The notes under the pieces are model-generated. The model worked only from the letters and a program-made list of their open reading frames with translations, was not told the origin of the DNA and ran no database searches. Positions 42,045 to 56,923 of a DNA stretch of 64,000 nucleotides are shown here, in pieces. A program made the translations under genes and the position numbers. The stretch's first letter is position 1; each line of letters starts with the position of its first letter. The stretch is taken from positions 188,877-252,876 of the IMG/VR virus record IMGVR_UViG_3300033143_006101; one strand, 5' to 3'.

Positions 42045-42527
42045 ATGACAACAGAAGTTAAGAACCAAGAAGATGTGGATTGTTTTAATAGTACTGCAAA
42101 ACATATCGAGTTTGTCAAACGTTACATGCAGAAAGTTTTATCGCTCCTACAACAACGGGCAGGGGCACATGATAAATCTAAATTAAAAGAACCGGAATTT
42201 GAGTTATTTGCTAAATACACACCTGAATTAGCTGGCTTAACATATGGTTCAGATGAATACAAAGAATGCATATCTAAATTAGCTCCTGCTTTAGAACATC
42301 ACTATGCTAAAAATAGGCATCATCCGGAACACTTTAAAAACGGCATTCGAGACATGAATTTAATAGATATAATAGAAATGTTTGTTGATTGGTATTGTGC
42401 GGCAATGAGACACAATAATGGAAATATTAGAAGAAGTATAGAATACAACCAGGAAAGATTTGATTTTTCAGATGATATTACTAAGATTTTTTATAATACC
42501 ATCGAAATTTTGGACATTTCTAATTAA
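42045..42527 (+). CDS. DUF5662-like HD-related protein
   Basis: HDKSKL..PE, HHYAKNRHHPEHF, EMFVDW. Confidence 0.7.
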   Translation: MTTEVKNQEDVDCFNSTAKHIEFVKRYMQKVLSLLQQRAGAHDKSKLKEPEFELFAKYTPELAGLTYGSDEYKECISKLAPALEHHYAKNRHHPEHFKNGIRDMNLIDIIEMFVDWYCAAMRHNNGNIRRSIEYNQERFDFSDDITKIFYNTIEILDISN

Positions 42528-42541
42528 ATTAGAAAAATTTT

Positions 42542-42572
42542 TGTAAAATAATCTGTGTTTCGGCTTTATATA
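42542..42572 (+). promoter_or_regulatory. TGTAAA-N16-CTTTATATA promoter-like motif overlapped by a long inverted repeat (42548-42616)
   Basis: Motif shared with 21130-21160 and 50297-50327. Confidence 0.6.
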
Positions 42573-42655
42573 GATAAGGGCTATAACAATAGTTTATAGG
42601 TCGGAACACAGATTATACTAAATAAATAAATATATAGAGACTTTGGAGTTATACA

Positions 42656-43507
42656 ATGAACGACGTTTTCCTATTACAAAATAGGTGGAAAGTACAAAAT
42701 ATTGTACATAACTGTAAACATAAAAAACACAAGAAATTGATTATGGATAGTTTTTTACTTTCTCGAATAACACGAAGAACTGAAGAACAAACTAAATTAT
42801 TACATATTAATATAAAAAAACTGGTGGAATTAAATAAGAAGAAGGATTGTAGCTTTTCTAGAGATACTATGTGTTTACTATTTCTTCCTTTAATAATAAA
42901 AATAACTACAGAATTATATTACAAATATTGTAGAAAACATTATCTCAGAATAATGTATAAAGATATATTTCAAGAAGGGTTCGTTATATTTTTAAAATTA
43001 TTAGACAAGTATGATAATAGAAAATCCGCTTTTCCTTATTATATAAAAATAATGTTAAAATTCCATTTAAAATATTATGTATTGGAGGTTATTAAATATA
43101 TTAAGATGACATCTACCAGAATGGTGGCCAATTCTCTGGCTGTGGATAGGAGTTGTGCATCTGAACATAAAGTAGTGTTAAATGTATTGGTAAGTATACT
43201 TTATCAAGATATCATAGATATAATCAAAATAATTAGAGTATCAAGAAATAGAGCACCCAGAACAATTAAAACTGTTTGTGATGAATTACTTCTTGGTCCT
43301 AATACAATACAGGGAGTAGCCACGAAATTAGGACTAACATATCATTCGATATATCAAGTTTATCAAAGAATTCAAGTAAAAGTAGCAGAAATGATTAATA
43401 ATAATAAATATGCTACTTGTCATGTGGATATTAATATTGCTTCTGCTACAGTATCAGGAAGTAACACTTATAATTTTACTGTACGTAATAGAAAATTCAA
43501 TGAATAA
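42656..43507 (+). CDS. RNA polymerase sigma factor-like protein
   Basis: Region-2-like YKDIFQEGFVIFLKLLDKYD....FPYYI and region-4-like HTH TIQGVATKLGLTYHSIYQ. Confidence 0.65.
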   Translation: MNDVFLLQNRWKVQNIVHNCKHKKHKKLIMDSFLLSRITRRTEEQTKLLHINIKKLVELNKKKDCSFSRDTMCLLFLPLIIKITTELYYKYCRKHYLRIMYKDIFQEGFVIFLKLLDKYDNRKSAFPYYIKIMLKFHLKYYVLEVIKYIKMTSTRMVANSLAVDRSCASEHKVVLNVLVSILYQDIIDIIKIIRVSRNRAPRTIKTVCDELLLGPNTIQGVATKLGLTYHSIYQVYQRIQVKVAEMINNNKYATCHVDINIASATVSGSNTYNFTVRNRKFNE

Positions 43508-43760
43508 GGAGAAAAAATATGCTAGACTTAGGAGGACAAGTATTATTAGATGTATCAGAGATTATTTGGGTAGAAAAGGTTGAGGGCTCTATGGCACTAA
43601 AACTATCCTTCCGAACAGGGAAAGAACAATTTATTGAATATGATACTGAAGCAGAAATGCATACAGATTATATGATGATAAAAAGAGCTAAAGAAAGACT
43701 AACAGAGGAAATAATTAATAAAGATATAGAAAGAGAAATTTAAATTAAAGGAGAGATGAT

Positions 43761-44642
43761 ATGAAAATAACAATTTTAGGTTGTGGAAACGCTTTTAGTA
43801 AAATCAATTATAATCAATGCTTTCTGCTAGAAGCTGACAGTAGAAAAATGTTAATTGATTTTGGAGCTAAGGCTCCTCTTGCTTTACATAATGCTGGTAT
43901 AGATATCAAAGAAATTGATGATGTCTATATCTCTCATTTACATGGGGATCATATTGGTGGTCTTGAAGAAATGGCATTTTTACGTTATGATTGGTATAAT
44001 AGACCAGTGCATTATAATGAAAGATCTATTAAAGACGCTCCTCCAAAATTGATTGCTAATGAACATTTGATGGGTGATCTTTGGAAAAAATCATTGTGTG
44101 GTGGATTAGATTCAATGGAAGGTTTTGATGCTACATTAGAGACATATTTTATACCTAAACCAATAAAACCTAATAAAACATTTAGATGGATGCAGTGGGA
44201 CTGTCAGCTGATACAACAAGTACACATTATGACAGGATCTATTATATCCAGTACATTTGGTTTATTTATGGAACAAAGTGGACATCCAACTATATATTTT
44301 ACTACAGATAGTCAACATTGCTCCCCGCGACAAGTAGAGATATTTTATGCTAAAGCAGATATAATCTTTCAAGATTGTGAATGTATTGGTGTAGATACTA
44401 AAGAAATGGAATTTAAATTCAGTTCGGGAATACATGCTAATTATGCTCAATTATCTGGTTGGAAATCAGCTAATAATGTTGTACTTTCTGATGAGATTAG
44501 AGCTAAAATGTGGCTCAGTCATTATCAAGATTTTGTTACAGAAGATAAAGACTTCTTCGGTAATGTTTGTGATTGGACCGGAATGTCTTGTGCTGACGGA
44601 TTTAAAGGGTTTCTTACAGTCGGACAAGAAATAGAAGTATAA
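43761..44642 (+). CDS. Metallo-beta-lactamase-fold hydrolase, Apyc1-like
   Basis: LGCGNAFSK, LIDFG..APLALH, SHLHGDHIGGLEE, IFQDCE, IHA, MWLSHYQD. Confidence 0.75.
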   Translation: MKITILGCGNAFSKINYNQCFLLEADSRKMLIDFGAKAPLALHNAGIDIKEIDDVYISHLHGDHIGGLEEMAFLRYDWYNRPVHYNERSIKDAPPKLIANEHLMGDLWKKSLCGGLDSMEGFDATLETYFIPKPIKPNKTFRWMQWDCQLIQQVHIMTGSIISSTFGLFMEQSGHPTIYFTTDSQHCSPRQVEIFYAKADIIFQDCECIGVDTKEMEFKFSSGIHANYAQLSGWKSANNVVLSDEIRAKMWLSHYQDFVTEDKDFFGNVCDWTGMSCADGFKGFLTVGQEIEV

Positions 44643-44657
44643 ATTATCTAAAAAAGT

Positions 44658-44689
44658 CCTTAAAGTTTCATCTATCCTATCTAATATTT
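44658..44689 (+). promoter_or_regulatory. Late-type promoter CCTTAA-N17-CTAATATTT
   Basis: Motif copy restarting late genes. Confidence 0.7.
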
Positions 44690-44724
44690 AAGAAGTAGTA
44701 AAATATTAAATAGAGGTAGATGAA

Positions 44725-45717
44725 ATGAACCCATTAATAAAAAACCCAGATTTAATGGATAAACTCCACAAGCAATATAGTGCAAACGGAGGAATCCAAG
44801 GTCAGTTTGATGTAAATTCTAATACTGTTTTGCCTGCACAACAAACAAGTGTAGATCAATCAGTAAACCAAGCTCCAATAGACTGGAATCAAGCAAATGA
44901 TAACACAGTACCTGATTCACAGCCAAAAGTAAGGAGTGCAAGTAATGTACCTGGCCCAGGCCCATTGCCGGATCCTACAGAACCGGTACCTGTAGAAGAT
45001 AAACCGGGGCAACAAGAGGCACCTACACCTGCACCTACGCCTACACCTGCACCACAAAGATCTATACAGGACCAGATTCAAGAAGTTGAGTCTAAACTTG
45101 GGGAAGCACCGCAGAACATTGCTGATGTTACTGCCCGGGCAAAAGCTTTCTTAGACGAATACAATGATGAAACATTTTATGTAGAGAATCAATCGAATGG
45201 GCATATTGTAATTTCTGATATGGATATTACAATTAAGCGAGCTAAGTGTGAGGACTTGTTAAAATTTGCAACGCTTGAGGACCTTAAAAAGTCAAGAGAT
45301 TTAAGAGCTATGTTAGCAAGTGCGGGATTACGCCCAATGTTAAAGAGGTTAACGCAAGAGGAATATTTAGTAAAGAAAAAACGTGAGTATGATAATAAAA
45401 GAGTTGTAGAGCAAATGAAAACACAGCATGCTCAGACTGCTCAACAGAATCCTCAACAGCCTCAAGCACAACCGCAACAACCTCAACAAGTAACACCTAG
45501 AATAAATCCAACTATTCTAAGTAAGCTTGAGAAATTAAGACTCTCTACAGTACCAGAAAGTGCTCATTTAGGATTAACACCACCAGAATTTATTGAATGG
45601 GTGTTAACAGAAAGCTTATCATCAGAAGAATTAGATTTTGTAGCAAGTCATCCTAATGTAGTACATAACAATGAGATAAGAACAGCTGTATATCAGCGAA
45701 AGAGTGAAATAGAGTAA
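44725..45717 (+). CDS. Pro/Gln-rich hypothetical late protein
   Basis: 330-aa ORF with GAGGT RBS. Confidence 0.55.
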   Translation: MNPLIKNPDLMDKLHKQYSANGGIQGQFDVNSNTVLPAQQTSVDQSVNQAPIDWNQANDNTVPDSQPKVRSASNVPGPGPLPDPTEPVPVEDKPGQQEAPTPAPTPTPAPQRSIQDQIQEVESKLGEAPQNIADVTARAKAFLDEYNDETFYVENQSNGHIVISDMDITIKRAKCEDLLKFATLEDLKKSRDLRAMLASAGLRPMLKRLTQEEYLVKKKREYDNKRVVEQMKTQHAQTAQQNPQQPQAQPQQPQQVTPRINPTILSKLEKLRLSTVPESAHLGLTPPEFIEWVLTESLSSEELDFVASHPNVVHNNEIRTAVYQRKSEIE

Positions 45718-46235
45718 AGAGGTATTGATAAGTGAAGAATAAAAAGATAACTGTATCTCAAGTAGATTTAAATACTGGGGATCAATTAAAAATCCCTTGT
45801 AGTTTATCAGGTGAGGACGATCCAAATCAACGAGAAGCCTCACCCAAATTTATTCATTTTATAAATGGAACAGGCAAGCTGATAGAGATCAATCTACTCA
45901 GCAAAACGGAATTATCAGAGTACACTACTTCAACTGGAAATTTTGAAGGAATGGGAATAGCAAACGGAGCTACTTATAATAGCATGCTATTAAGCATTGA
46001 TCCAGAAGATTCAAATAATCCAATCGATTATATATTAGTCAAGAAAGCCGAAGCAGGTGATGTCTCTGCAGTATTAGATGTCTACTGCATTAACTATGTG
46101 TAAAAGGATCCGCTTAGAATGTCAAACTTGTCTGTTTTTCTTTACGGTAAGTAAAAAGAGATATGATAATAAAAATGAGATGATTCTCTGTCGTTATTGT
46201 GAGAGCCCTAATTTAGTACTATTAAGACATTCGGA

Positions 46236-47168
46236 GTGCACATGCTAAGATTAATTAATATTGCGGAACAAACTAGTACCGGTTTAACATTTAGTACAGA
46301 AGAAATAACAGAAAAAGATAAAGTAGCATATGTCATGTATGATACTAGTACAGGTATAGCTAATATGAATGATTATTATTCTTGGCGTACCTTGACTACT
46401 TCTACTGGAACTTCTACACTCTTTGAGTTAGATATAGACAATACTAAAAAATATCCTGGTACTGATGATAACGTATTGGATTACGATATTTTTGATCCTA
46501 AACTATTTAAAGTAATGACATGGGCAGAGCATGAAGTCATTCAAATGTTATTATCACGAATAGATTTAATTCGAAGACGATTCCCTAATCCCGGACCTAC
46601 AATTTCAGATACAGATGCTATAGGGCAAGGTGGAGTAATAGGGTTTGGTGGAGGATGGGATAAAAAATTCTCTCTTGAAGAATTAAGACATATGGTGGAG
46701 GGAGCTCTTATTGAAGTAAACATACACCCTCCGGCAACTGAATTCTGGTGGCAATATAGTAGTGAAGATAGGGATAAAGCATATAGCCCCTATCAAAGAT
46801 CAGAAAGCTTAGGGATACCATATAAATTTATAGATTTAATAGTACATGGGGCCATCATTAGATGTCTTACAGCATGGGGTATTTTAGAAATCGATATTAA
46901 TTTTAGTTCTTCTGATTCAGGACTAACAATAACATATGATCGTGTGGGGCACATATCAACCTGGATGCAAAATTTATTAAATGATTATAAAGAGATGAAA
47001 ACTTTTATTAAGATGGATTCTATTAATAGTTATGGCGTAGGAGTCGGAACGTATCCATTTGCTGTATCAGCTCTTTGGGGTGCTGCAATGAACATGATTT
47101 CTCAAGGTGGAACAGTGCCTCTTAGTTCTATGTTAGGATTTGGAATCAGAGCAAACACACCATTATAG
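46236..47168 (+). CDS. Probable head-tail connector/neck protein
   Basis: Position in the late operon; FSLEEL...ALIEVNIHPP and FSSSDSGLTITYDR pattern. Confidence 0.45.
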   Translation: MHMLRLINIAEQTSTGLTFSTEEITEKDKVAYVMYDTSTGIANMNDYYSWRTLTTSTGTSTLFELDIDNTKKYPGTDDNVLDYDIFDPKLFKVMTWAEHEVIQMLLSRIDLIRRRFPNPGPTISDTDAIGQGGVIGFGGGWDKKFSLEELRHMVEGALIEVNIHPPATEFWWQYSSEDRDKAYSPYQRSESLGIPYKFIDLIVHGAIIRCLTAWGILEIDINFSSSDSGLTITYDRVGHISTWMQNLLNDYKEMKTFIKMDSINSYGVGVGTYPFAVSALWGAAMNMISQGGTVPLSSMLGFGIRANTPL

Positions 47169-47367
47169 AAGGAGATTTAGTATGAAAATTAACAGTAACA
47201 CAGTTCAATTAGAAACAGAACATCATCAAGCCGTTGAAACAATTATCAAAAAAATTGCTTCAGAGAATAAGATTGAAAACGTTGAATCTGTTTCAATAAC
47301 TTTGGATCCAAAGCAAGGTATGGTACAGTTTAAATCTATCAATAAAGATGAGCGTGGACAATAGATA

Positions 47368-48045
47368 ATGTCTTGGATAAGTGAAATACAAAGACAAATT
47401 AAACAATTAGTACCATCAACAAAAGCTTATCTCAATAAAAAGCCTGGTAGAGAAGTAGAAGCCAATTTTACAGAAAGAGCTTCGGATTTAGTATTTACTT
47501 CTGATGAGGAGATTGAGATAAAAAAAGATTTCTTAACTCTTAATAGATATTCACGACCAGGTAAATTGCGAATAGCTATTAAAGGCATAGAAATTCATTG
47601 GGTGGCTAACCCAAAAACTTCCGCAAAGTTCAATAGAAATTATTTTGAACTAAGAAAAGGAGGTAAATATGGATTTGGTTCTACACAATTTATCATTGAT
47701 TTAGACGGTGATATTATTCAGATGATACCAGAAGCAGAAATAGCTTACTCATCGGGAAGTAGTTCAGGATATAAAGATGGAATTAAAACAAGATTAGGAA
47801 GTAAAACACCTTACTATTATACTTTATCTATTGAATGTACACATACTAATTGGAAAGGTGAAATGGATCAGTCTACACATAATGCTCTTGTTGAACTATG
47901 TGTTCATCTTTGTAAGAAATATAAATTAACAGCAAGGGATTTATATCTACATTATGATATAACAGGAAAGAATTGTCATAGATGGTTTGTAGATAACCCT
48001 GAATTATGGGGTGAGTTTAGAGATGAGGTAGATGTAGAATTGTAA
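47368..48045 (+). CDS. N-acetylmuramoyl-L-alanine amidase (Amidase_2), endolysin candidate
   Basis: IEIHWVAN, STQFIIDLDG.I.Q.IPE.EIAY, SIECTH, HYDITGKNCH. Confidence 0.88.
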   Translation: MSWISEIQRQIKQLVPSTKAYLNKKPGREVEANFTERASDLVFTSDEEIEIKKDFLTLNRYSRPGKLRIAIKGIEIHWVANPKTSAKFNRNYFELRKGGKYGFGSTQFIIDLDGDIIQMIPEAEIAYSSGSSSGYKDGIKTRLGSKTPYYYTLSIECTHTNWKGEMDQSTHNALVELCVHLCKKYKLTARDLYLHYDITGKNCHRWFVDNPELWGEFRDEVDVEL

Positions 48046-48072
48046 TTTTTTTACCGACATAACATTTTTTAC

Positions 48073-48101
48073 TTGACGAAGGAGAACTAAATTGTTATAT
48101 T
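48073..48101 (+). promoter_or_regulatory. Sigma70-type promoter TTGACG-N17-TATATT with extended TG, heading the tRNA island
   Basis: Predicted +1 coincides with the ATG at 48108. Confidence 0.8.
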
Positions 48102-48107
48102 GTAAAC

Positions 48108-48248
48108 ATGAAAATGCGAAGACAAATATATTTTACCAACCCGAACCTAAAACCGAATTGCCTCTCGGTACAGGGATGGTTATGTCCAGATCATGGCACA
48201 GAGAACATCTATGCGGTGATAGGGAAAGGTAGGTCTGCTTTTCGTTAA
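48108..48248 (+). CDS. Leaderless 46-aa leader peptide (putative attenuator peptide)
   Basis: MKMRRQIYFTNPNLKPNCLSVQGWLCPDHGTENIYAVIGKGRSAFR*; all 20 amino acids, 37 distinct codons; below the ORF-track length cutoff. Confidence 0.7.
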   Translation: MKMRRQIYFTNPNLKPNCLSVQGWLCPDHGTENIYAVIGKGRSAFR

Positions 48249-48274
48249 TTGATATTATTCATTATTTTACTCTC

Positions 48275-48309
48275 AAAAACGAAAGGCGAAAACCTTTCGT
48301 TTTTTTTTT
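48275..48309 (+). terminator. Intrinsic terminator/attenuator upstream of the first tRNA
   Basis: ACGAAAGG-cgaaaa-CCTTTCGT followed by T9. Confidence 0.9.
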
Positions 48310-48353
48310 GGTTTTTTAATTGGTATCTGGAGATGCTAGTTTTTTGTAGAAAG

Positions 48354-48440
48354 GGTGAGTTGGCAGAGCCCGGTTTATTGCACTGGTTTGCTAAATCAGA
48401 GGGTGTAACAGCCCCGAAGGTTCAAATCCTTCACTCACCG
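48354..48440 (+). tRNA. tRNA-Ser(GCT)
   Basis: GGTGAGT/ACTCACC acceptor, ctggt-ttGCTaa-atcag, long variable arm, G73. Confidence 0.93.
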
Positions 48441-48707
48441 AATTACTGCTAAAACAATAAAAGAAATGAAATTGTATGATATTATAGCAAAGATAATGCA
48501 AAGATAACGATTATTACTGATAAACCAGTAATAATTCTCGAATCGCGAATAGCGAATGGAGGGCTTTATGATAGCATATCAATGTATACGTAAAAGTTGT
48601 GGTAAAATAATATCATCTCATGAGGTCTTAAGAATAAGAAGACCTGATAAAATAACTAAGAAATGTCCTCATTGTAAAGGGCAAGTTAGTAAAATACATG
48701 TGAAATA

Positions 48708-48794
48708 GGAGCGGTGGCAGAGTCTGGCTAATTGCGTCAGTCTTGAAAACTGAAGGGTGTAACAGCCCCGTGGGTTCAAATCCTACCCGCTCCG
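48708..48794 (+). tRNA. tRNA-Ser(TGA)
   Basis: GGAGCGG/CCGCTCC, tcagt-ctTGAaa-actga, long variable arm. Confidence 0.95.
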
Positions 48795-48806
48795 AAGGAG
48801 AATGAA

Positions 48807-49105
48807 ATGGGGGCAAACGAAAAAAACCTTGGATCCATCAAGTAGGTCGAGTTGTTGCAAATAATGCAACAGTTGTTTCCGGGGAACAAACTTTTCGATT
48901 GGTAGACACGTTAGGAATACCATTAGAAATCATCCTGGAAAGGTTCGAGCAAGAAAATATTGTAGTCCAGTGGCAAAAGTTTTATGACATGGGACTAAAA
49001 GTAGGATGGAACGAACAGACCGTAATTGATCGAATGAAGTATGCTATTATTGATATTTATGGTATCCATTATTGGGAAGAAGTAAATAAAAGATTAAGGA
49101 GGTAA
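48807..49105 (+). CDS. Small protein resembling an alanyl-tRNA synthetase helical segment; needs a -1 frameshift from the RBS-linked ATG
   Basis: VSGEQTFRLVDTLGIPLEI resembles AlaRS SGEDAFKLYDTYGFPLDL; A_AAA_AAC at 48821-48827. Confidence 0.5.
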
Positions 49106-49143
49106 TACCATGTTATAGTTAAATCCAAGTAAGGAGAAAGATT

Positions 49144-49347
49144 ATGGCACATGGTTACAGGGCTTCCCGGATGTCTAATCATTGTGGGTATGACTATTGG
49201 AGTGCTAGAAAGCACAATAGAAATACCCTAAACAAAGCCAGGTGGTTAAGCCCAACAAGGCATAAATATTCTAAAAAGCTTACGTATCGAGAAGAACGAA
49301 AGATGAATAAACAAATTATTCAGGAGGACTTACATGAACTGTATTAA
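49144..49347 (+). CDS. Small basic Arg/Lys-rich protein
   Basis: AAGGAG RBS; GYDYWSAR motif. Confidence 0.6.
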   Translation: MAHGYRASRMSNHCGYDYWSARKHNRNTLNKARWLSPTRHKYSKKLTYREERKMNKQIIQEDLHELY

Positions 49348-49387
49348 GGAGGTTGGAGTTTTCTGACTTTAATGTTAGGAGGCTCTT

Positions 49388-49678
49388 ATGTTTTACTCTT
49401 GGAATAGCTGGACAGGAGAATACGACGAACACGATTGTCCTGTTTGGTGGATGTTGAATGATCATATTGGATATTATAGAATCCAACGAACGCAACAAGA
49501 AATGACTCGTTGGTACAGAGATTTAGAAGAACCAGTAAAGCTAAGACAACGGAGAAGTCCAAAAAACTTGAATCCGTGGATCATTGAGACGATCCCTAGT
49601 AGATGTTGTTCTAAATCCTGGAAAGACCTGTATAAAATTCGCAGGCAATGGCAGGCCCCGAAAACTATAGTACGGTGA
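49388..49678 (+). CDS. Small basic Trp/Arg-rich protein
   Basis: AGGAGG RBS; RTQQE...KLRQRRS..NL.PW...KSWK...RRQW. Confidence 0.6.
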   Translation: MFYSWNSWTGEYDEHDCPVWWMLNDHIGYYRIQRTQQEMTRWYRDLEEPVKLRQRRSPKNLNPWIIETIPSRCCSKSWKDLYKIRRQWQAPKTIVR

Positions 49679-49755
49679 AACCTGTAAGATATTTGACAAC
49701 TCCGGTCTCATTTTTGTTCAGAATGTAACCTCAAGGTTACAAACTGAACACTTTT

Positions 49756-49839
49756 GGTGCAGTTGAGCAGTGTGGTGTGCTTAGCAGGCTGTAAACCTGT
49801 GCTCATTTGAGATTAGTGGTTCGATTCCACTCTGCACCA
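49756..49839 (+). tRNA. tRNA-Tyr(GTA)
   Basis: GGTGCAG/CTGCACC, gcagg-ctGTAaa-cctgt, variable arm. Confidence 0.93.
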
Positions 49840-49918
49840 ATTTTAAAATCTATTTGAATCTTAAAAGTGATTGATAAATTACTACTCTTTAAATAAGAGT
49901 TACATAGGAGGTTCGAAT

Positions 49919-50178
49919 ATGAAATGTGAAAATTGCAACAACGAGCACGATGGTTCTTATGGTTCTGGTAGATTCTGCTCTGAAAAATGTGCTAGAGGAT
50001 TTTCTACGACGGTAATTCAAAGAATAACAAAGAAGAGAACCTGGAACTAATTTGTCCTAATTGTCATTCCTTGACTGTAAATTATGGTTCTTTAAACATG
50101 GGTAATGGTAGAAAATATTATAGGGATTTAAAAAGAAAACAAGCAGGTGTAGCTCAGATTGGGAGAGCACAAGACTGA
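49919..50178 (+). pseudogene. HNH endonuclease remnant (internal deletion/frameshift) running into tRNA-Phe
   Basis: MKCENCNNEHDGSYGSGRFCSEKCARGFST, then in another frame DGNSKNNKEENLELICPNCHS...KQAGVAQIGRAQD*. Confidence 0.7.
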
Positions 50179-50216
50179 AAATCTTGGTGTCGTCGGTCCG
50201 ATTCCGACCATCTGCA
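50143..50216 (+). tRNA. tRNA-Phe(GAA)
   Basis: caaga-ctGAAaa-tcttg; T-loop TCCGATT. Confidence 0.92.
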
Positions 50217-50296
50217 TATAATAGGACAAAAATCGGGGCATTTTGTCCCGATTTTTGTCCCGATTCAAATAAAATGTAATTTTTTGCAAAAAAAAG

Positions 50297-50327
50297 TGTA
50301 AAATTATGTCTAGTTATACTTTATATA
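50297..50327 (+). promoter_or_regulatory. TGTAAA-N16-CTTTATATA promoter-like motif inside the tRNA island
   Basis: Closely similar, including flanks, to the element upstream of parB. Confidence 0.6.
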
Positions 50328-50358
50328 AGTAGGGCATAAAAAGTAAAGGTTATAATAT

Positions 50359-50775
50359 ATGTCGTATAAAAATAAGCAAAGGCAATTAGAATACCAACGA
50401 AACTGGATGAGGAAAAGAAGAAATATGTTTTTTTCAGGTAAAGTTTGTGCGAAATGTGGGTCTTCAAAAAAATTGGTATTACATCATATAAATCCAGAAG
50501 AAAAAGAAAGTCATTATGTTTGGTCGTGGTCAGAAAAACGAAGAGAAGCAGAGCTTAAAAAATGTGTTGTTTGGTGCGAAAAGTGTCATATTGAATATCA
50601 TACAAATAAACGGAGATTAAAAAATATACATGGTACACGTACTGGATATAATAAGTATAAATGTCGTTGCGATGCTTGTATACAAGCTAATAGCCTATAT
50701 CAAAAACAATGGCGTAATCAAAAACAATTAGCTGGCGTTGTGTCCGAACTGGTTAGGTCATCGATTGCAACTTGA
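50359..50775 (+). CDS. HNH endonuclease (paralogue of 52502-52885); stop lies inside tRNA-Cys
   Basis: CAKCGS..LVLHHINP..K...ELKKCVVWCEKCH; HGTRTGY..CRC..C. Confidence 0.8.
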   Translation: MSYKNKQRQLEYQRNWMRKRRNMFFSGKVCAKCGSSKKLVLHHINPEEKESHYVWSWSEKRREAELKKCVVWCEKCHIEYHTNKRRLKNIHGTRTGYNKYKCRCDACIQANSLYQKQWRNQKQLAGVVSELVRSSIAT

Positions 50776-50805
50776 TATATGCAGGTTCGAATCCTGTCAA
50801 CGCCT
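50734..50805 (+). tRNA. tRNA-Cys(GCA)
   Basis: GGCGTTG/CAACGCC, U73, ttGCAac loop. Confidence 0.92.
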
Positions 50806-50811
50806 AATAAA

Positions 50812-50884
50812 ACTCCCAGAGTTCGACTGGCTGAACGCCTGTGTTACAAGCAGGTATGTCTTGGTTCAAATCCAAGTGGGAGTA
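50812..50884 (+). tRNA. tRNA-Val(TAC)
   Basis: ACTCCCA/TGGGAGT, cctgt-gtTACaa-gcagg; atypical G8 and G32. Confidence 0.85.
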
Positions 50885-50898
50885 ATAAGGAGAATAAT

Positions 50899-51486
50899 AT
50901 GTTTGAATTACAAGATTATTTAAAAAAATACGAAGATTTTAATGTAATAGATACAGATGCTTATTGTATTACAAAATCTAATATGAAAGATCAATTAAGT
51001 CATTGGGGTGCAGAAGAGATTGCTGAAAGATCATTTATTAATGCTCTTTGGATTACTTGTTCAGAATCCGGAAAGATAATATCATCAGATAATTTTGCAG
51101 AAACTGGACTAAAACATTTATTAGAAGCTGTACAATACGAAGTAGAAAAGAAGAGGAGACTTGTAGATGCTTTTCTTTTTAATAGAGCAATGTTAGGTAA
51201 CATGAAACATTATGTAAATGCTATTGATTTTGATCCTATAACGGACAAGGATAAATTAGTAACGGAGGGTATTTTTGGTAGTTTGTGGGGAGTAAATATA
51301 ACAATAATTACTACAATACCTCATAAAACTATTTTTTCAATAGAAGCTAAAAATACTTTAGGCTATTATCGAGTAGAAGGAGATATATTAGAAATAGGAA
51401 TTAATCCAGATGCAGTAGCAGTAGCAACTAAGAAAAAGTATATAAGGTCTAAGTTAGAACCTTTACCTTTAAACCTTGAAGAATAA
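50899..51486 (+). CDS. Truncated paralogue of the major capsid protein (195 aa)
   Basis: LEAVQYEVEKKRRLVDAFLFNRAMLGNMKHYVNAIDFDPIT...GIFGSLWGVNI vs MCP LETLQYEVERHRLLVDKFIMNRAELGDLKKNINAIDYDPIT...GIFGSIWGVNI. Confidence 0.85.
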   Translation: MFELQDYLKKYEDFNVIDTDAYCITKSNMKDQLSHWGAEEIAERSFINALWITCSESGKIISSDNFAETGLKHLLEAVQYEVEKKRRLVDAFLFNRAMLGNMKHYVNAIDFDPITDKDKLVTEGIFGSLWGVNITIITTIPHKTIFSIEAKNTLGYYRVEGDILEIGINPDAVAVATKKKYIRSKLEPLPLNLEE

Positions 51487-51487
51487 T

Positions 51488-51560
51488 GGGAGCGTAGCTC
51501 AATTGGGAGAGCGTCTGCCTTGCACGCAGAAGGTCGCGAGTTCGACTCTCGCCGCCTCCA
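51488..51560 (+). tRNA. tRNA-Ala(TGC)
   Basis: G3:U70, tctgc-ctTGCac-gcaga. Confidence 0.95.
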
Positions 51561-51581
51561 ATGGATCCATTAAGTTAGATC

Positions 51582-51654
51582 CCCCTTCTCTACACCAAGA
51601 ATGCTAAAATATGAGGGGCTATGAGTAGAGAACGGGTATTAATAGCCCCTCATA
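51582..51654 (+). ncRNA. Pseudoknot/switch element upstream of a small membrane-peptide gene
   Basis: 13-bp stem 51610-51622/51642-51654; loop GTAGAGAA is complementary to TTCTCTAC at 51586-51593. Confidence 0.55.
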
Positions 51655-51695
51655 AATAAGATGATATGAAGTAATCCACTATCAGGAGGTATACC

Positions 51696-51836
51696 ATGTC
51701 ATCTTGTAACAAATTATTAACCACTGCATTATGGATGATTGCAGGGTGTCTCATAGCGATACTTTTAACCTTGTTCACTTTTATGAACAAGATGGATTTA
51801 ATACTTCAAACATTAAAAAGTATGGCTGTTCTTTAA
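51696..51836 (+). CDS. 46-aa single-TM hydrophobic peptide
   Basis: AGGAGG RBS; MSSCNKLLTTALWMIAGCLIAILLTLFTFMNKMDLILQTLKSMAVL*. Confidence 0.6.
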   Translation: MSSCNKLLTTALWMIAGCLIAILLTLFTFMNKMDLILQTLKSMAVL

Positions 51837-51840
51837 AGAC

Positions 51841-51979
51841 GGGGGAGTGCAGGCCAATGGTTGGCCATCTGATTTTGGGTCAGACAAAGCACTGCATTAA
51901 AGCTGTATCAACTTGAACCTTTTAGGTTCCATAAGAAACCAGCGTACAAGCATATCGGTTCGATTCCGACTCTCCCCCA
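51841..51979 (+). tRNA. tRNA-like gene 1 (TTG anticodon) with ~70-nt variable-loop module
   Basis: GGGGGAG/CTCCCCC, ggcc/ggcc D stem, tctga-ttTTGgg-tcaga, GGTTCGATTCC; insert 51885-51954. Confidence 0.8.
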
Positions 51980-51981
51980 CA

Positions 51982-52194
51982 TGGCTCAACTGGTATAGCC
52001 AATCAGTTAAACGCAGAGATAACAGGCTCCTTTGAAAAAAACATGAGAGTCTCTGACAAAGGAAAGTTGATCACTAAACCTTGATACAAATCGCATGCGT
52101 GTATCTGCCTTCCAGGAAAGACTGGTTTACCCTATGCTTTCATCGGCATCGCCTTCATCGGCGTGATAGGGGTTGACAGCTCGGAAAGACGGGC
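51982..52194 (+). ncRNA. ~210-nt multi-pseudoknot structured RNA candidate
   Basis: Two H-type pseudoknots, twin TTCATC-loop hairpins, two GGAAAGAC hairpins, no ORF of 60 aa or more. Confidence 0.65.
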
Positions 52195-52199
52195 AACAC

Positions 52200-52342
52200 G
52201 GCGAAGTAGCCAAGTTGGGTAAAGGCACTAGAATTGAAATCTAGCTAACAGCAGACTAACTAAATTAACTTGAACTCAGAAGAGTTCCCCATAACTTAGT
52301 TTACAAGCAAAATTATCGATGGTTCGAGTCCATCCTTCGCCA
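52200..52342 (+). tRNA. tRNA-like gene 2 (TGA anticodon) with 73-nt variable-loop module
   Basis: GGCGAAG/CTTCGCC, ctaga-atTGAaa-tctag, gatgg-TTCGAGT-ccatc; insert 52245-52317. Confidence 0.8.
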
Positions 52343-52344
52343 AT

Positions 52345-52481
52345 GCCCGAGAAGCTCATGGAGAGCACTTTTTCTACTAAAAAAGAGGTAACAATTCTTT
52401 TGGGTTATTTCAACTTGAACTCTTTAGAGTTCCATCGGAACTAACTTACAAGCATTTGCCGTTCGATTCGGCACTCGGGCT
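52345..52481 (+). tRNA. tRNA-like gene 3 (ambiguous ACT / 8-nt loop) with 71-nt variable-loop module
   Basis: GCCCGAG/CTCGGGC, 5-nt D-loop, ctttt-tctactaa-aaaag, tgccg-TTCGATT-cggca; insert 52386-52456. Confidence 0.75.
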
Positions 52482-52501
52482 CATAAAATTTTAGAGGGTT
52501 T

Positions 52502-52885
52502 ATGCCATACAAGGATAAGGAGAAGCAATCAGAGTATCAGTTGCAATGGATGAAAGCTAGAAGAAATGCTTTCTTTAATGGCAAGTGTTGTAAAAAATGT
52601 GGGTCTATGTTTAACTTAGTCTTACACCATAAAAACCCAGCCGAGAAAGAAGATCATAGGATATGGTCGTGGTCGGAAGAAAGAAGAAATGCAGAACTTA
52701 AAAAATGTGTTGTTTGGTGTTTATCATGTCACATAGAACATCATGCTGATAGACTGAGATTAAAAGAAATACACGGCACAAGAACTGGTTATAAGAATTA
52801 TGGGTGTCGATGTAAAAAATGCACACAAGCAAATACGGTTTACATAAGAAATTGGAATAGAAGAAAAAAAGGGGTATTCGTCTAG
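52502..52885 (+). CDS. HNH endonuclease; stop lies inside tRNA-Glu
   Basis: CKKCGS..LVLHHKNP...ELKKCVVWCLSCH. Confidence 0.8.
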   Translation: MPYKDKEKQSEYQLQWMKARRNAFFNGKCCKKCGSMFNLVLHHKNPAEKEDHRIWSWSEERRNAELKKCVVWCLSCHIEHHADRLRLKEIHGTRTGYKNYGCRCKKCTQANTVYIRNWNRRKKGVFV

Positions 52886-52943
52886 TGGACTAGGACATCG
52901 GGTTTTCAATCCGACAACAGGAGTTCAATTCTCCTATACCCTA
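52871..52943 (+). tRNA. tRNA-Glu(TTC)
   Basis: tcggg-ttTTCaa-tccga; GTCTAGTGG..AGGAC D arm. Confidence 0.93.
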
Positions 52944-52956
52944 ATAAGGAGACAAT

Positions 52957-53613
52957 ATGAAACCAAGTGATGCAGGCATAGCAAACTCATTACATTTTAC
53001 GAGTAAAGATTATCCTGAAGAGGTGAAGAAGAATTTTCTTACTATCACCTAGGATGGGAAAAGAGGCAGACCAAAGTTTCCTGAAAGGACTTGTTCACGA
53101 TGTGAAAAGATTACTGAGAGGAAAAACAAATCCGGGATGTGTCAAAAATGTTTAAAACTTACTAACAAAGAAAGAAGAGAGGAAGAAAAAGCAGCTGAGC
53201 CTAAGTATAACTGTAAAGAATGCACTGCACCGATTACCAGGCATAGTAAATCAGGATTGTGTCAGACATGTTTTAGTTTAACTCGTACCAAGATGCCAAC
53301 AGAGGAAGTACTCGAAGAAGATGTTAAAAAATTAAGCGTAATAGCAATGAGTAAAAAGTATGGGGTATCTGATGCAACCATAAACAAATGGATGAGGCTT
53401 TATGGAATAAAAAGAGTACTTTCTTGGCGTAGGACATTGCCATCCGAAGAACAGCTTAAAAAAGATTTAGTGGATCTGCGGTATGACGATATAGCAAAGA
53501 AGTATAACGCAACAAAAAACCAAATTAACAAATGGATAAAGCATTACAATCTACAAGGCTATAAAAAGATTTTAAGAATAGAGGGAAAGAAAAACGAAAA
53601 CAATAAAGGGTGA
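52957..53613 (+). CDS. Zn-finger/HTH protein interrupted by an in-frame TAG at 53050-53052
   Basis: AAGGAG RBS and ATG 52957 are in frame with ORF 53137; a repeated CxxC...KSGxCQxC unit spans the predicted start. Confidence 0.55.
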
Positions 53614-54055
53614 TTTAATCAAGTTAGCATTGGAAGGGCACTTCGATGTTATTATTCATGGATGTAATTGTTATCGTACCATGGGTAAAGGTATTGCAAG
53701 TACTATTAAACGAGTTTTTCCTGAAGCATACACAGCCGATAGAGAAACACGTGCCGGAGCCAGCAAGCTTGGTACTTTTTCTCATGCTACAGTCGTAAGA
53801 CCAAAGGGAAGAATAACTATTGTAAATGCATACACACAAGACAGATTTAATCCTAAATACAGTAAAGGAAAAAGCATGGCTGATTACCGGGCAATAACTG
53901 ATGTAATGAAAAGCATCAAAGTGGCATTTCACGGATTTAGAATTGGTTATCCTAAAATAGGAGCAGGGCTTGCTCGTGGTGATTGGAATAAAATATCTGA
54001 AATTATTGATAGAGAGTTGGAAGGAGAAGATCACACGTTGGTAGTATTACCATAA
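53594..54055 (+). CDS. Macrodomain (ADP-ribose/Appr-1''-p processing) protein, apparent ACG start
   Basis: KTIKGDLI...IIHGCNC..TMGKGIA, VNAYTQ, YPKIGAGLARGDW. Confidence 0.85.
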   Translation, partial: TKTIKGDLIKLALEGHFDVIIHGCNCYRTMGKGIASTIKRVFPEAYTADRETRAGASKLGTFSHATVVRPKGRITIVNAYTQDRFNPKYSKGKSMADYRAITDVMKSIKVAFHGFRIGYPKIGAGLARGDWNKISEIIDRELEGEDHTLVVLP

Positions 54056-54060
54056 AATAC

Positions 54061-54135
54061 AGAGGCATAGCATAGTTTGGTCAAATGCAGCGGGTTTTGA
54101 TCCCGTGATCTCAAGTTCAAATCTTGATGCCTCTA
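54061..54135 (+). tRNA. tRNA-Gln(TTG)
   Basis: AGAGGCA/TGCCTCT, gcggg-ttTTGat-cccgt. Confidence 0.92.
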
Positions 54136-54754
54136 ATAAAGGAGATAGATGTGGGTGAAGAGCATAAAGATTGTGATTGTGGTGGTGATGAAGATGATTG
54201 TGTTTGTGACAATGATGATGATATAATTATACTAGATGATGAAGAAGACATAGAGAAAATAAGCACTCCAAGTATAAATAATTTGTTAGAAACAATAATT
54301 AAAGAATTACAGACTATGAATACTAAAATAGAAAAGATTAATAATAAATTAAAAGCATTAAGTGATAGGGTAGACGAAATTTATATGGATGGTTTTTGAT
54401 ATGGGAAATTAAGATGAAACCAAATGATGTATTAAAATGGGATCCACATTGGGTTAAATATAGTGACCCCAATAAAGATAGATTAGTCAGTTTAAAAGTA
54501 ACACATCTTCGGACAGAGACTTCTGTAGAAGTACGAAATTATGCATCAGGTTTAGATTATACTGTCACAATGGATTTTTTAAAAGATCGATTACATGTAC
54601 TGACCGATTACACAGATGGAAAAAGAATGTAAGTGTGGAGCCATGATGCTCCATATAACATTTGCTAACAAAGCAAAGTTAGCAGTATATCATTGCAAGA
54701 AGTGTGGAAGAACAGTCACAGAACCATTAAATGAAACTATAAAGAGGATATAAT

Positions 54755-55864
54755 ATGAAAGCACCACCAAAGAAAAAAACAACAGGTAAAGGTAAAACAG
54801 CAAGTAAAAATGCCCCTAAGAGAAAACCAGTAGAAAGAGAAGAAATTTCAAAGGTTGAAGAGATATTCTCAGAGGACAATGCTCGTATAAGATTCGGGGT
54901 AGAATGTGTACCAGCGATTAAGGTACGAATGCAATCAGATCCAAATTCTTTTGCCCATTTGTTTCATAGTTATATATTAGAGCAAGGGCAGATAGGATGC
55001 CATAACTTACACCCACCAAGAAAAATTCTTTACCTGGAAGATAAACAAGAAGGTCCTGAGAGTTTAGGTACTCGAGTAGATATTAGTAATAAAACTTCAA
55101 GGGTTTTTCCCAGTGAATATGTTATAGCCATAACTGTGGATATACCCCTATCAGAAATAGCGATTCGTACCAAGATAGACATACTCCATAAAGAGCTTGT
55201 TGATACAGCTTCTTCAAAATTAAACAGGAATATAGCTACGAATTGGCTCAAGCTTCTTTATGCCTCTGCACTGGTTAATAAAAATATTAAAACTCTAAGA
55301 AGCTTCTGGAGGAACATCCCAGTTATTCGTTGGAAAGTTCTTTTTAGTTTAATCACTAAAGCGAGAAGTAAAATTCATCAAAGGGGGTACCAGACATTGG
55401 TATTTTTAGTTCACCCGGCAACACTTGCGGAATTGGAACTATTTCTTGGAGGCCATCTAAGAGTAACTTCAACCAGTTTTCCATATGTTAAACAATCAAT
55501 ATATGTTCCGGAAGGGTTTGTGCTTATATTTCCCAATGATAGGACTATGGCTGCAAAGAATATACGAATAGATTTGACTGCGTTTGGGGCTAATAAGTTT
55601 GTTATGGGATCAGCTACCTTTGGGTTTATGTTTGTACAGTCTGAGTCCTCTGTTATTCTTGATCCCGAATCCGTAGTTTGTATTAGAATGAGTAATTTTA
55701 AAATTCCTGGTTATCTAAAAGAAATTAAGTCTTATCTGATGCCTACGGTTTTTTCTAAGCTAAAAGAGAAAAGCATAAAGCTGTGGGGAAAAGTTAAGAA
55801 GTTAAAGAATAAGATAATGAATAGGATAAAGAAGTTTAGGAAGAAAAATGCTGGAATCGCATAG
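54755..55864 (+). CDS. Divergent full-length paralogue of the major capsid protein with Lys-rich termini
   Basis: RIRFGVECVP/QGQI/RVFPSEY/SEIAIR/VPEG/IRIDLT..ANKF..FGFMFV..DPESV align in order with MCP RLRFGAEMIP/QGQI/RIFPPEF/SEIATR/VPEG/IRVDLT..ADQF..YGWLFV..NPRSV. Confidence 0.85.
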   Translation: MKAPPKKKTTGKGKTASKNAPKRKPVEREEISKVEEIFSEDNARIRFGVECVPAIKVRMQSDPNSFAHLFHSYILEQGQIGCHNLHPPRKILYLEDKQEGPESLGTRVDISNKTSRVFPSEYVIAITVDIPLSEIAIRTKIDILHKELVDTASSKLNRNIATNWLKLLYASALVNKNIKTLRSFWRNIPVIRWKVLFSLITKARSKIHQRGYQTLVFLVHPATLAELELFLGGHLRVTSTSFPYVKQSIYVPEGFVLIFPNDRTMAAKNIRIDLTAFGANKFVMGSATFGFMFVQSESSVILDPESVVCIRMSNFKIPGYLKEIKSYLMPTVFSKLKEKSIKLWGKVKKLKNKIMNRIKKFRKKNAGIA

Positions 55865-55933
55865 AGGTCGAGTGCACCTGCCTTGTAAGCAGGAGGGTAA
55901 ACCCCCGCGTCAGTTCAAATCTGACTTCCAGCT
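55850..55933 (+). tRNA. tRNA-Thr(TGT) with long variable arm
   Basis: GCTGGAA/TTCCAGC, cctgc-ctTGTaa-gcagg, 15-nt variable region with a GGG-taaa-CCC stem. Confidence 0.9.
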
Positions 55934-55939
55934 CATAAA

Positions 55940-56372: not shown

Positions 56373-56391
56373 TAATTGAAGGTATAATTAA

Positions 56392-56852: not shown

Positions 56853-56923
56853 GAGCTTTAGTTTACTTGGGAAAACACTACCCTGTCACGGTAGAGTAAG
56901 GAGATCGAAACTCCTAAGCTCCG
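56852..56923 (+). tRNA. tRNA-Asp(GTC)
   Basis: GGAGCTT/AAGCTCC, ctacc-ctGTCac-ggtag; T-loop ATCGAAA. Confidence 0.92.

What the first reader, a model, noticed from the sequence alone, without database searches (positions are those of the whole stretch)
48073..48354. Candidate 'codon-sampling' attenuator that turns on the phage tRNA island when the host tRNA pool fails
Seen: a sigma70 promoter (TTGACG-17-TATATT, 48073-48101) has its predicted +1 at the A of an ATG (48108). A leaderless 46-codon ORF follows, then a strong intrinsic terminator (48279-48309), then the first tRNA (48354). The peptide contains all 20 amino acids and uses 37 distinct codons of 46. These include all four Gly codons, four Arg codons, both Cys, Gln and Asn codons, and GC-rich CCG/TCG/GCG/CTC in an AT-rich genome. 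Uniform random use of 61 codons would give only about 32.5 distinct. The ORF end TGCTTTTCGTT (48236-48246, covering Ala-Phe-Arg and the stop) can form 11 contiguous pairs (2 G-U) with AACGAAAGGCG (48278-48288), the 5' arm and loop of the terminator, which makes it an antiterminator. A weaker competing hairpin GAAAGGTA/TGCTTTTC (48224-48243) completes a trp-like 1:2/2:3/3:4 layout. Established: ribosome-mediated attenuators (trp, his, thr) sense one or two amino acids through codon runs, and host anticodon nucleases (PrrC, PARIS AriB, retron PtuAB) are countered by phage tRNAs. Inference: a ribosome that finishes the peptide masks the antiterminator strand (island OFF), while stalling at almost any depleted codon frees it (island ON). 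That would be a general translation-health sensor for inducible counter-defence. I do not know of a described example. Caveats: AGY, UUG, CUG and CGG codons are not sampled, and an internal promoter-like motif exists at 50297.
Basis: partly seen in the sequence, partly recalled or inferred. Interest (0 to 1): 0.95.

Follow-up and report, generated by a model that had tools for sequence, protein, structure and literature searches.

The report
Switchable terminator before phage tRNA genes
A strong promoter, a 170-base RNA leader that can fold in two rival ways and a terminator sit just before a giant phage's tRNA genes, so it looks like an on/off transcription switch, but nothing shows that it works by a ribosome "sampling" all codons.

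Summary
They are the promoter (48073-48101), an ATG at the predicted +1 (48108), a 46-codon ORF with 37 distinct codons and all 20 amino acids, the terminator (48275-48304) and tRNA-Ser (48354).

The antiterminator pairing is real. It is unlikely by chance (P 0.0005-0.02). It occurs at only one of about 12 terminator-like hairpins in the window. The switch strand (48233-48246) pairs instead with the transcript's 5' end, including the AUG. The leader therefore has three competing helices, and the terminated and read-through folds are nearly equal in energy.

The codon-sampling idea has little support:
- The other frames with 35-37 distinct codons nearly all lie over tRNA genes or other GC-balanced, non-protein-coding sequence.
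- Composition-matched shuffles give P 0.016-0.04.
- The overlapping frame also encodes all 20 amino acids.
- Codon usage resembles non-coding sequence.
- The gene caller called no gene here, and no homologue exists.

No relative of this leader was found, so covariation cannot be tested.

Best reading: a conditional terminator gating the first tRNA/ORF unit, with its sensor unknown. A plain operon terminator remains a strong rival.

The parts
48073..48101 (+). Sigma-A/sigma-70-type promoter: -35 TTGACG, 17-nt spacer, extended -10 TGnTATATT. Predicted +1 at 48108.
   Evidence: It lies in the 62-nt gap after the amidase stop (48045). Only 3 hits of this quality with a TG occur in 128 kb of both strands.
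48079..48094 (+). Shine-Dalgarno-like AAGGAGA, then 6 nt, then a TTG start (48092). It overlaps the promoter spacer and would serve the alternative frame, ORF B.
   Evidence: The spacing matches that of real genes in this window.
48092..48232 (+). ORF B: 46 codons, TTG start, overlapping ORF A in another frame. It has 32 distinct codons and also all 20 amino acids.
   Evidence: The only hits among 1.84 billion representatives are repeat-driven and spurious. No Pfam match.
48108..48248 (+). Translation is unproven.
   Evidence: No homologue, no Pfam match, not called by the JGI gene caller.
48108..48123 (+). Strand 1: the 5' strand of closing helix P1 (anti-antiterminator). It includes the AUG.
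   Evidence: Pairing probability with strand 2 is 0.80-0.83 before strand 3 has been transcribed.
48152..48225 (+). Two internal hairpins (48152-48169 and 48185-48225) inside the P1-closed domain, which is 42.5% GC in a genome of about 33% GC.
   Evidence: z -2.3 for 48108-48250; GC content.
48233..48246 (+). Strand 2, the switch strand. It pairs either with strand 1 (P1) or with the terminator's 5' arm (antiterminator). It covers the last codons of ORF A and the first base of its stop codon.
48275..48309 (+). Intrinsic terminator: a 12-bp stem with a 6-nt loop, ending in a T10 run that includes the last five bases of the 3' arm. Strand 3 is 48278-48288.
   Evidence: It is the first + strand terminator after 40903, so it also ends the operon 42045-48045.
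48354..48440 (+). tRNA-Ser(GCU), the first gene downstream. No promoter-like site lies between the terminator and this tRNA.
50233..50256 (+). Terminator-like hairpin plus T5 directly after tRNA-Phe. It is the likely end of the first unit, which holds tRNAs Ser, Ser, Tyr and Phe and five small ORFs.

Best explanation
This is a conditional terminator, that is, a transcription-attenuation leader. It sits at the head of the first tRNA/ORF transcription unit of an uncultivated 253-kb jumbo phage.

Shown by prediction:
- Host RNA polymerase would start at about 48108.
- As the leader is made, strand 2 (48233-48246) first closes a 139-nt GC-rich domain by pairing with the transcript's 5' end (helix P1).
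- When the terminator's 5' arm emerges, strand 2 is predicted to switch to it, forming the antiterminator.
- The fold with terminator plus P1 and the fold with the antiterminator are almost equal in energy.

Inferred:
- Read-through is the default.
- Termination is imposed when strand 2 is held away from strand 3. That could happen through a factor that locks P1 (a ligand or a protein, as in OFF riboswitches). It could also happen through a ribosome sitting on the end of the ORF.
- I rank a non-coding, factor-locked P1 slightly above the ribosome version.
- The same hairpin also ends the upstream operon 42045-48045.
For: - The promoter is among the three best in 64 kb and sits in a short intergenic gap.
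- No promoter-like site lies between the terminator and tRNA-Ser. The island's tRNAs are wedged between ORFs with no signals of their own.
- The antiterminator forms in the minimum-energy fold once the 3' arm is left out.
- The partner of strand 2 shifts as the transcript grows. It pairs with the 5' end at probability 0.8 and then with the terminator arm at 0.92. In the full-length transcript the split is 0.55 to 0.19.
- The two full-length folds are -53.4 and -52.1 kcal/mol.
- Complementarity beats shuffles at P 0.0005-0.005 and 0.023 in a global test.
- Only this one of about 12 terminator-like hairpins shows it.
- The leader domain is GC-rich and more stable than shuffles (z -2.3 to -2.9).
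- The layout meets the P1 / antiterminator / terminator definition used for regulated terminators. The gap between strands 2 and 3 is 31 nt (PMC5314783).
Against: - All evidence comes from one sequence, found identical in two samples of one study. There is no covariation, and no transcript or ribosome data.
- The structure z-scores are modest and equal on both strands.
- No Rfam family matches, so no ligand or partner can be named.
- Strands 1/3 and 2/4 of any attenuator resemble each other. A decayed tandem copy of the terminator hairpin would therefore give the same complementarity.
- The terminator has an ordinary job as the end of the upstream operon.
- Jumbo phages may use promoters of their own that the scan cannot see.
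Confidence: 0.45

Rival explanations
1. One reading: ribosome-mediated attenuation on a leaderless 46-codon ORF. A ribosome that reaches the stop codon masks strand 2, so the island is OFF. Stalling at a depleted codon leaves strand 2 free, so the island is ON. In the strong form, the ORF is built to sample nearly all codons.
For: - The AUG sits exactly at the predicted +1, and the frame stays open to strand 2, with the stop codon overlapping it.
- 37 distinct codons and 20 amino acids are jointly rare in composition-matched shuffles (P 0.002-0.012).
- The folding picture fits: any state that leaves strand 2 free favours the antiterminator.
- Leaderless attenuator ORFs are described in Corynebacterium (PMC11857589) and in mycobacteria (10.1101/834739).
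- Stall-sensing uORF attenuators exist in Bacillus (PMC4191407, PMC9226507).
Against: - The ORF's codon usage is worse than that of every real-CDS window and is typical of off-frame sequence.
- 39 of the 40 most codon-diverse frames listed for this window lie in the tRNA island, not in long CDSs. Those outside this leader mostly run over tRNA genes, their antisense strands or a structured element.
- The overlapping frame B also encodes all 20 amino acids.
- AUG at +1 is half-expected from P1 pairing, which needs A-(C/U)-G-A-A-A-A opposite the strand-2 bases (inference).
- Any open frame would end soon after entering the AT-rich spacer.
- There is no Shine-Dalgarno sequence, no gene call and no homologue.
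- AGY codons, read by the first tRNA of the island, are absent. Only 24 of the 46 codons are read by tRNAs found in the window.
- The sampled GC-rich codons are ones the phage hardly uses.
- The host is probably a Bacillota, where RNA polymerase outruns ribosomes (PMC13323073).
Confidence: 0.15
2. No regulation. The hairpin is simply the terminator of the operon 42045-48045. The promoter makes a short RNA of about 200 nt, or is a chance match. The tRNAs are expressed by leaky read-through or from phage-specific promoters. The complementarity is chance or a relic of a duplicated hairpin.
For: - No other + strand terminator lies between 40903 and 48275.
- The amidase stop has no hairpin of its own.
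- An unrelated phage, L011, also has a terminator-like hairpin 10 nt before its first tRNA.
- Promoter-like sites overall are no more frequent than in shuffles.
- Small stable RNAs of unknown role next to the T4 tRNA genes are a precedent (from memory, not checked here).
Against: - Several modest coincidences would have to combine: a top-ranked promoter inside the operon's 3' end, strand-2 complementarity (P 0.003, about 0.04 after correcting for 12 terminators), a GC-rich structured domain, and no visible promoter for the first tRNAs.
Confidence: 0.3
3. A small protein gene in the other frame. ORF B (48092-48232) would be translated from upstream-operon transcripts through its strong Shine-Dalgarno sequence. 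Its terminating ribosome would also cover strand 2 and so secure termination of that operon.
For: - AAGGAGA followed by 6 nt and TTG matches the ribosome-binding pattern of real genes here.
- The ORF B stop lies 4 nt before strand 2.
Against: - TTG is a rare start codon.
- Codon usage falls in the lowest 1% of real-CDS windows.
- Not called as a gene, no Pfam match, and only spurious repeat-driven hits.
- The start lies upstream of the predicted +1, so transcripts from the local promoter cannot encode it.
Confidence: 0.1

Closest known systems
Leader-peptide transcription attenuators (trp, his, leu type), including the leaderless ilvBNC attenuator of Corynebacterium glutamicum (PMC11857589)
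   Same: - A promoter-proximal terminator with a mutually exclusive antiterminator and an anti-antiterminator.
- A short ORF that ends at strand 2.
- In ilvBNC the first hairpin also hides a leaderless start codon.
   Different: - There are no runs of regulatory codons.
- The ORF is three times longer than most leader peptides.
- The downstream genes are tRNAs, not biosynthetic enzymes.
- Translation is unproven.
- Strand 1 is the extreme 5' end, 110 nt away from strand 2.
OFF riboswitches with a P1 / antiterminator / terminator expression platform (purine, TPP and SAM type; defined in PMC5314783)
   Same: - A multi-stem domain closed by P1, whose 3' strand doubles as the antiterminator's 5' strand.
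- Terminated and read-through folds of similar energy.
- A GC-rich domain in an AT-rich genome.
   Different: - No match to any Rfam aptamer.
- P1 starts at +1.
- No ligand can be proposed, and there is no conservation.
Translation-stress-sensing uORF attenuators: bmrB-bmrCD (PMC4191407), vmlR (PMC9226507) and E. coli toiL (PMC12121999)
   Same: These already show that a uORF can report general trouble in translation and switch on downstream genes through a terminator.
   Different: - Those uORFs are short, have ribosome-binding sites, and respond to drug-stalled ribosomes at particular positions.
- None is proposed to survey the tRNA pool codon by codon.
- None is in a phage or upstream of tRNAs.
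T-box leaders
   Same: A leader in Bacillota that reads tRNA status and flips an antiterminator/terminator pair.
   Different: - No Rfam T-box hit, even at E of 10 or less in a 321-nt scan.
- No UGGN bulge in the antiterminator, and no Stem I-like specifier architecture.
Phage early-promoter / terminator modules overcome by antitermination (lambda N-nut type; from memory)
   Same: A host-type promoter followed within 200 nt by a strong terminator that gates downstream phage genes.
   Different: No nut/boxA-like site or antiterminator gene was identified. Here an RNA-intrinsic alternative helix exists.

Membership tests
Ribosome-mediated (leader-peptide) transcription attenuator | Intrinsic terminator between the promoter and the regulated genes | tested here: met
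   the terminator is at 48275-48304 and the first tRNA at 48354.
Ribosome-mediated (leader-peptide) transcription attenuator | Antiterminator helix (2:3) mutually exclusive with the terminator | tested here: met
Ribosome-mediated (leader-peptide) transcription attenuator | Anti-antiterminator helix (1:2) | tested here: met
Met by the pairing of the 5' end (48108-48123) with strand 2.
Ribosome-mediated (leader-peptide) transcription attenuator | A translated short ORF positioned so that the ribosome controls strand 1 or 2 | tested here: inconclusive
   - The ORF exists and ends on strand 2.
- It has no Shine-Dalgarno sequence and is leaderless only if +1 is 48108.
- Its codon usage resembles non-coding sequence.
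- It was not called as a gene.
- Translation cannot be tested with these tools.
Ribosome-mediated (leader-peptide) transcription attenuator | Regulatory codons: runs of codons for the sensed amino acid | tested here: not met
   no codon occurs more than 3 times and there are no tandem runs.
Ribosome-mediated (leader-peptide) transcription attenuator | Conservation of the ORF and helices in relatives | not testable with these tools
   No relative carries the leader.
Riboswitch / riboregulator with conditional termination (PASIFIC definition, PMC5314783) | P1, an antiterminator (strands 2-3 at most 50 nt apart) and a terminator as alternative folds of comparable energy | tested here: met
   -53.4 against -52.1 kcal/mol, with a 31-nt gap. 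Definition.
Riboswitch / riboregulator with conditional termination (PASIFIC definition, PMC5314783) | Recognisable aptamer family or ligand | tested here: not met
   No Rfam 15 match above noise.
T-box leader | T-box covariance-model match, or an antiterminator bulge that pairs with the tRNA 3' end | tested here: not met
   One search gives no hit. The antiterminator loop (48247-48277) contains no UGG.
Ordinary intrinsic terminator of the upstream operon | GC-containing hairpin plus a U-tract, downstream of the last gene, with no earlier terminator | tested here: met
   no + strand terminator lies between 40903 and 48275.

The most novel reading that the evidence does not exclude
It would be a leaderless, codon-diverse ORF whose translation to completion shuts off the phage tRNA island. 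Ribosome stalling at nearly any depleted codon, for example after attack by an anticodon nuclease, would turn the island on. That would make it a general sensor of the tRNA pool for inducible counter-defence.
Probability: 0.07. Interest if true: 0.9.

Novelty: new variant of a known kind. Interest (0 to 1): 0.4.

Why it matters
Phage tRNAs are now known to rescue infection from tRNA-cutting host defences (PMC11464382, PMC11555353). How phages control their tRNA genes is hardly studied, and my literature searches turned up no regulated terminator in front of a phage tRNA cluster.

If this leader really switches, it would be a first example of conditional expression of a phage tRNA island. It is also compact, about 250 nt, and could be synthesised and tested in laboratory strains. 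If the ribosome version were true, it would add a new sensing logic to attenuation.

As it stands, it is a single-sequence prediction from an uncultivated phage.

Tried and rejected
Searches for relatives, all without result:
- Near and distant DNA searches of GenBank phages found nothing.
- The amidase in IMG/VR found only the window's own contig.
- The amidase in JGI metagenomes found one 51% relative in another context, with no tRNAs.
- Amidase relatives at 57-65% identity in the 5.8-billion-protein set sit in different neighbourhoods with no tRNAs.
- Island proteins of 68, 96 and 195 aa found only themselves, apart from distant Aeromonas phage hits for the 68-aa protein.
- Leader DNA patterns in IMG/VR gave chance hits only.
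- A tRNA-Ser pattern found one unrelated phage, L011.
- I walked 69 kb along the 266-kb contig ERZ23498405 scaffold_9. It held no tRNAs and shared only the RNR and amidase genes with the window, so it is a distant phage and a dead end.
- The second sample's copy, L010, is identical.

Protein and RNA identity checks:
- ORF A has no homologue.
- ORF B has only repeat-driven hits.
- Neither has a Pfam match.
- The leader is not a pseudo-tRNA and is not repeated elsewhere in the window.
- No Rfam family matches.

Rejected ideas:
- Stop-codon recoding as a complication. Stop-codon usage is ordinary: TAA 26, TGA 6, TAG 6.

Not used: the genome-contig scan, two viral scans and the structure-prediction tools. 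I saw no question they could settle.

Full report
**What the window is.** The window is the last 64 kb of IMG/VR contig IMGVR_UViG_3300033143_006101. This is a 252,876-bp, roughly 33% GC jumbo phage genome from a metagenome. Its signals are of the Bacillota type: AAGGAGA ribosome-binding sites and extended -10 promoters. Its amidase resembles those of Bacillus and Listeria phages and of Clostridia and Paenibacillus. Positions 22.8-48.0 kb carry + strand genes and end with an Amidase_2 endolysin-like gene at 47368-48045. From 48354 to the contig end lies an island of at least 15 tRNAs interleaved with small ORFs.

**Checking the observation.**
- The promoter (TTGACG, 17-nt spacer, TGnTATATT) is at 48073-48101. 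It is the best + strand match in 18 kb and one of the three best in the window.
- The -10 hexamer ends seven bases before an A that follows a C, at 48108. That A is therefore the likeliest start of transcription, and it opens an ATG.
- The ORF 48108-48248 has 46 sense codons, 37 of them distinct, and encodes all 20 amino acids.
- The terminator at 48275-48304 is a perfect 12-bp stem (-13.0 kcal/mol) running into a T10 tract.
- tRNA-Ser(GCU) starts at 48354.
- Positions 48236-48246 can form 11 pairs, two of them G-U, with 48278-48288.

**Is the antiterminator more than chance?** Yes, moderately.
- The best duplex between the leader and the terminator's 5' arm is -14.1 kcal/mol, against -8.0 +/- 1.8 in dinucleotide shuffles. 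That gives P 0.005, or 0.0005 if only the proximal 60 nt are considered.
- I ran the same test on about 12 terminator-like hairpins found across the window. Only this one stood out (P 0.003; all others above 0.1), so the null model is not miscalibrated by A- or U-richness.
- A global test asked how much energy is lost when the 3' arm is forbidden to pair. It gave P 0.023.

**How the leader folds.** Instead, as soon as strand 2 (48233-48246) exists it pairs with the extreme 5' end of the transcript (48108-48123), AUG included, with probability 0.80-0.83. This closes a 139-nt domain that holds two internal hairpins.

When the transcript reaches 48290, strand 2 switches to the terminator's 5' arm with probability 0.92. 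In the full-length RNA, terminator plus P1 (-53.4 kcal/mol) and the forced antiterminator (-52.1) are nearly equal in energy. This is the P1 / antiterminator / terminator architecture used to define regulated terminators, with a 31-nt gap between strands 2 and 3 (PMC5314783).

The domain is 42.5% GC in a 33% GC genome. It is more stable than shuffles, with z -2.3, or -2.9 with the terminator included. The opposite strand scores the same.

**Is the codon diversity meaningful?** Against real genes it is extreme.
- 12,493 in-frame 46-codon windows from 38 long ORFs average 25.8 distinct codons and never exceed 35.
- Sampling from genome codon usage gives P of about 5e-5.

Real genes are the wrong null, however.
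- The ORF's codon usage is worse than that of every real-CDS window and sits in the middle of the off-frame distribution.
- I listed the 40 stop-free 46-codon frames with the most distinct codons (35 or more) in all six frames. Apart from this ORF and one window in a long CDS, they all lie in the tRNA island. Most run across tRNA genes, their antisense strands, an insert-bearing tRNA-like gene, or a structured intergenic element at 61621-61731.
- High codon diversity here is therefore the signature of GC-balanced, RNA-gene-like sequence read as if it were protein.
- Shuffles that keep the ORF's own composition give 31.9-32.9 distinct codons. P for 37 or more is 0.016-0.042, P for all 20 amino acids is 0.04-0.09, and P for both together is 0.002-0.012.
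- The overlapping frame B (48092-48232) also encodes all 20 amino acids.

**Is ORF A a gene?** Nothing says so.
- It has no Shine-Dalgarno sequence, no Pfam match and no homologue among 5.8 billion proteins.
- The JGI gene caller left 48046-48567 empty in both samples.

Its three suggestive properties are AUG at +1, a frame open to strand 2, and a stop codon on strand 2. All three are weaker evidence than they look (inference).
- P1 pairing with the strand-2 bases requires A-(C/U)-G-A-A-A-A at the 5' end, so AUG is a one-in-two outcome.
- About 5% of composition-matched shuffles are stop-free, and two of the three frames are open here.
- Any open frame must end soon after it enters the AT-rich spacer behind strand 2.

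Together I estimate these properties favour a translated ORF by perhaps 20-30 fold. That is set against a low prior for ribosome-mediated attenuation in Bacillota, where RNA polymerase outruns ribosomes (PMC13323073). Exceptions exist: bmrCD (PMC4191407), vmlR (PMC9226507), the leaderless ilvBNC attenuator in Corynebacterium (PMC11857589) and leaderless mycobacterial uORFs (10.1101/834739).

A competing signal is a strong AAGGAGA, followed by 6 nt and a TTG at 48079-48094, which would drive frame B from upstream-operon transcripts. Frame B has only repeat-driven, spurious hits.

**Transcriptional context.**
- The only + strand terminators between 40.9 kb and 50.3 kb are those at 40903, 48275 and 50233, plus a hairpin with a poor T tail at 49355-49386 that overlaps the ribosome-binding site of the gene starting at 49388.
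- Sigma-A-like intergenic promoters also occur at 41988 on the + strand (before the gene at 42045) and at 35109 on the - strand, so host-type promoters seem to be used.
- The 48275 hairpin therefore also terminates the operon 42045-48045.
- No promoter-like site lies between it and tRNA-Ser.
- The island's tRNAs abut stop codons upstream and ribosome-binding sites downstream. The first tRNAs thus depend on polymerases that pass this terminator.
- A terminator right after tRNA-Phe (50233-50256) probably closes this first unit.

**The comparative test could not be done.** No relative of the leader exists in GenBank phages, IMG/VR, JGI metagenomes or the large protein collection. The second sample's copy is identical. 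Amidase relatives at 57-65% identity sit in other neighbourhoods. I walked 69 kb along the largest of these contigs (266 kb). It held no tRNA and shared only the RNR and amidase genes with the window. An unrelated phage from a sister sample (L011) has a compact seven-tRNA array that is also preceded by a terminator-like hairpin, 10 nt upstream. This hints that terminators in front of phage tRNA arrays may be common and mundane.

**Verdict.** The anatomy is real. The alternative-helix layout is statistically non-random, so a conditional terminator gating the first tRNA/ORF unit is the best reading (confidence about 0.45). The input it senses is unknown. I slightly prefer a non-coding leader whose P1 is locked by some factor over a ribosome-based switch (about 0.15). 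I give the full codon-sampling idea about 0.07. A plain operon terminator with incidental complementarity remains a serious rival (about 0.3).

General translation-stress sensing by uORF attenuators is already known (PMC12121999, PMC4191407, PMC9226507). The new element would be the phage tRNA context and, if true, the codon survey.

Noticed in passing
window 51841-51978, 52200-52342, possibly 52343-52487 (+): tRNA-like genes of 138-145 nt carry an insert of about 60-65 nt after the anticodon arm. The inserts share a conserved core (CAACTTGAAC..GTTCC..ACAAGCA). Rfam scores the second as tRNA (53 bits) and the first as a sub-threshold tRNA-Sec. ARAGORN, with intron search switched on, reads the second as tRNA-Phe with a 58-nt intron. 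No tRNA tool detects the third.
   Followed up: partly
window 61621-61731 (+): A GC-rich, tightly closed RNA structure (-51.9 kcal/mol, z -3.9) lies immediately upstream of the ribosome-binding site and ATG of the gene at 61746. It matches no Rfam family and may be another cis-regulatory RNA in the island.
   Followed up: partly
window 43761-44642 (+): A metallo-beta-lactamase-fold protein matches the anti-Pycsar Apyc1 family (Pfam PF23023, E 4.5e-19). It is a likely counter-defence gene in the operon that ends at the 48275 terminator.
   Followed up: no
window 63417-63488 (+): Rfam finds an extra tRNA here (47 bits) that ARAGORN missed.
   Followed up: no
window 24810-29105 (+) and 8613-11606 (-): Inteins with LAGLIDADG domains interrupt a 1431-aa protein of unknown function and a class II (B12-dependent) ribonucleotide reductase. 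The distant 266-kb phage also has an intein-bearing RNR.
   Followed up: no
window 48440-63500 (+): The island's tRNAs are wedged between ORFs. The upstream ORF's stop codon abuts the tRNA, and ATAAGGAGA plus an ATG follows within about 15 nt. HNH-like endonuclease ORFs (for example 50359-50775) recur. This implies long polycistronic tRNA-mRNA transcripts.
   Followed up: partly
L011 1134-1836 (- strand), IMGVR_UViG_3300033153_002115: An unrelated 98-kb phage from a sister sample has seven tightly packed tRNAs. A 12-bp terminator-like hairpin precedes them, 10 nt upstream of the first tRNA.
   Followed up: partly
L034 12919-14718 (-), ERZ23498405 scaffold_9: The distant 266-kb phage carries an IS605/OrfB (TnpB-like) gene next to a resolvase gene.
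   Followed up: no
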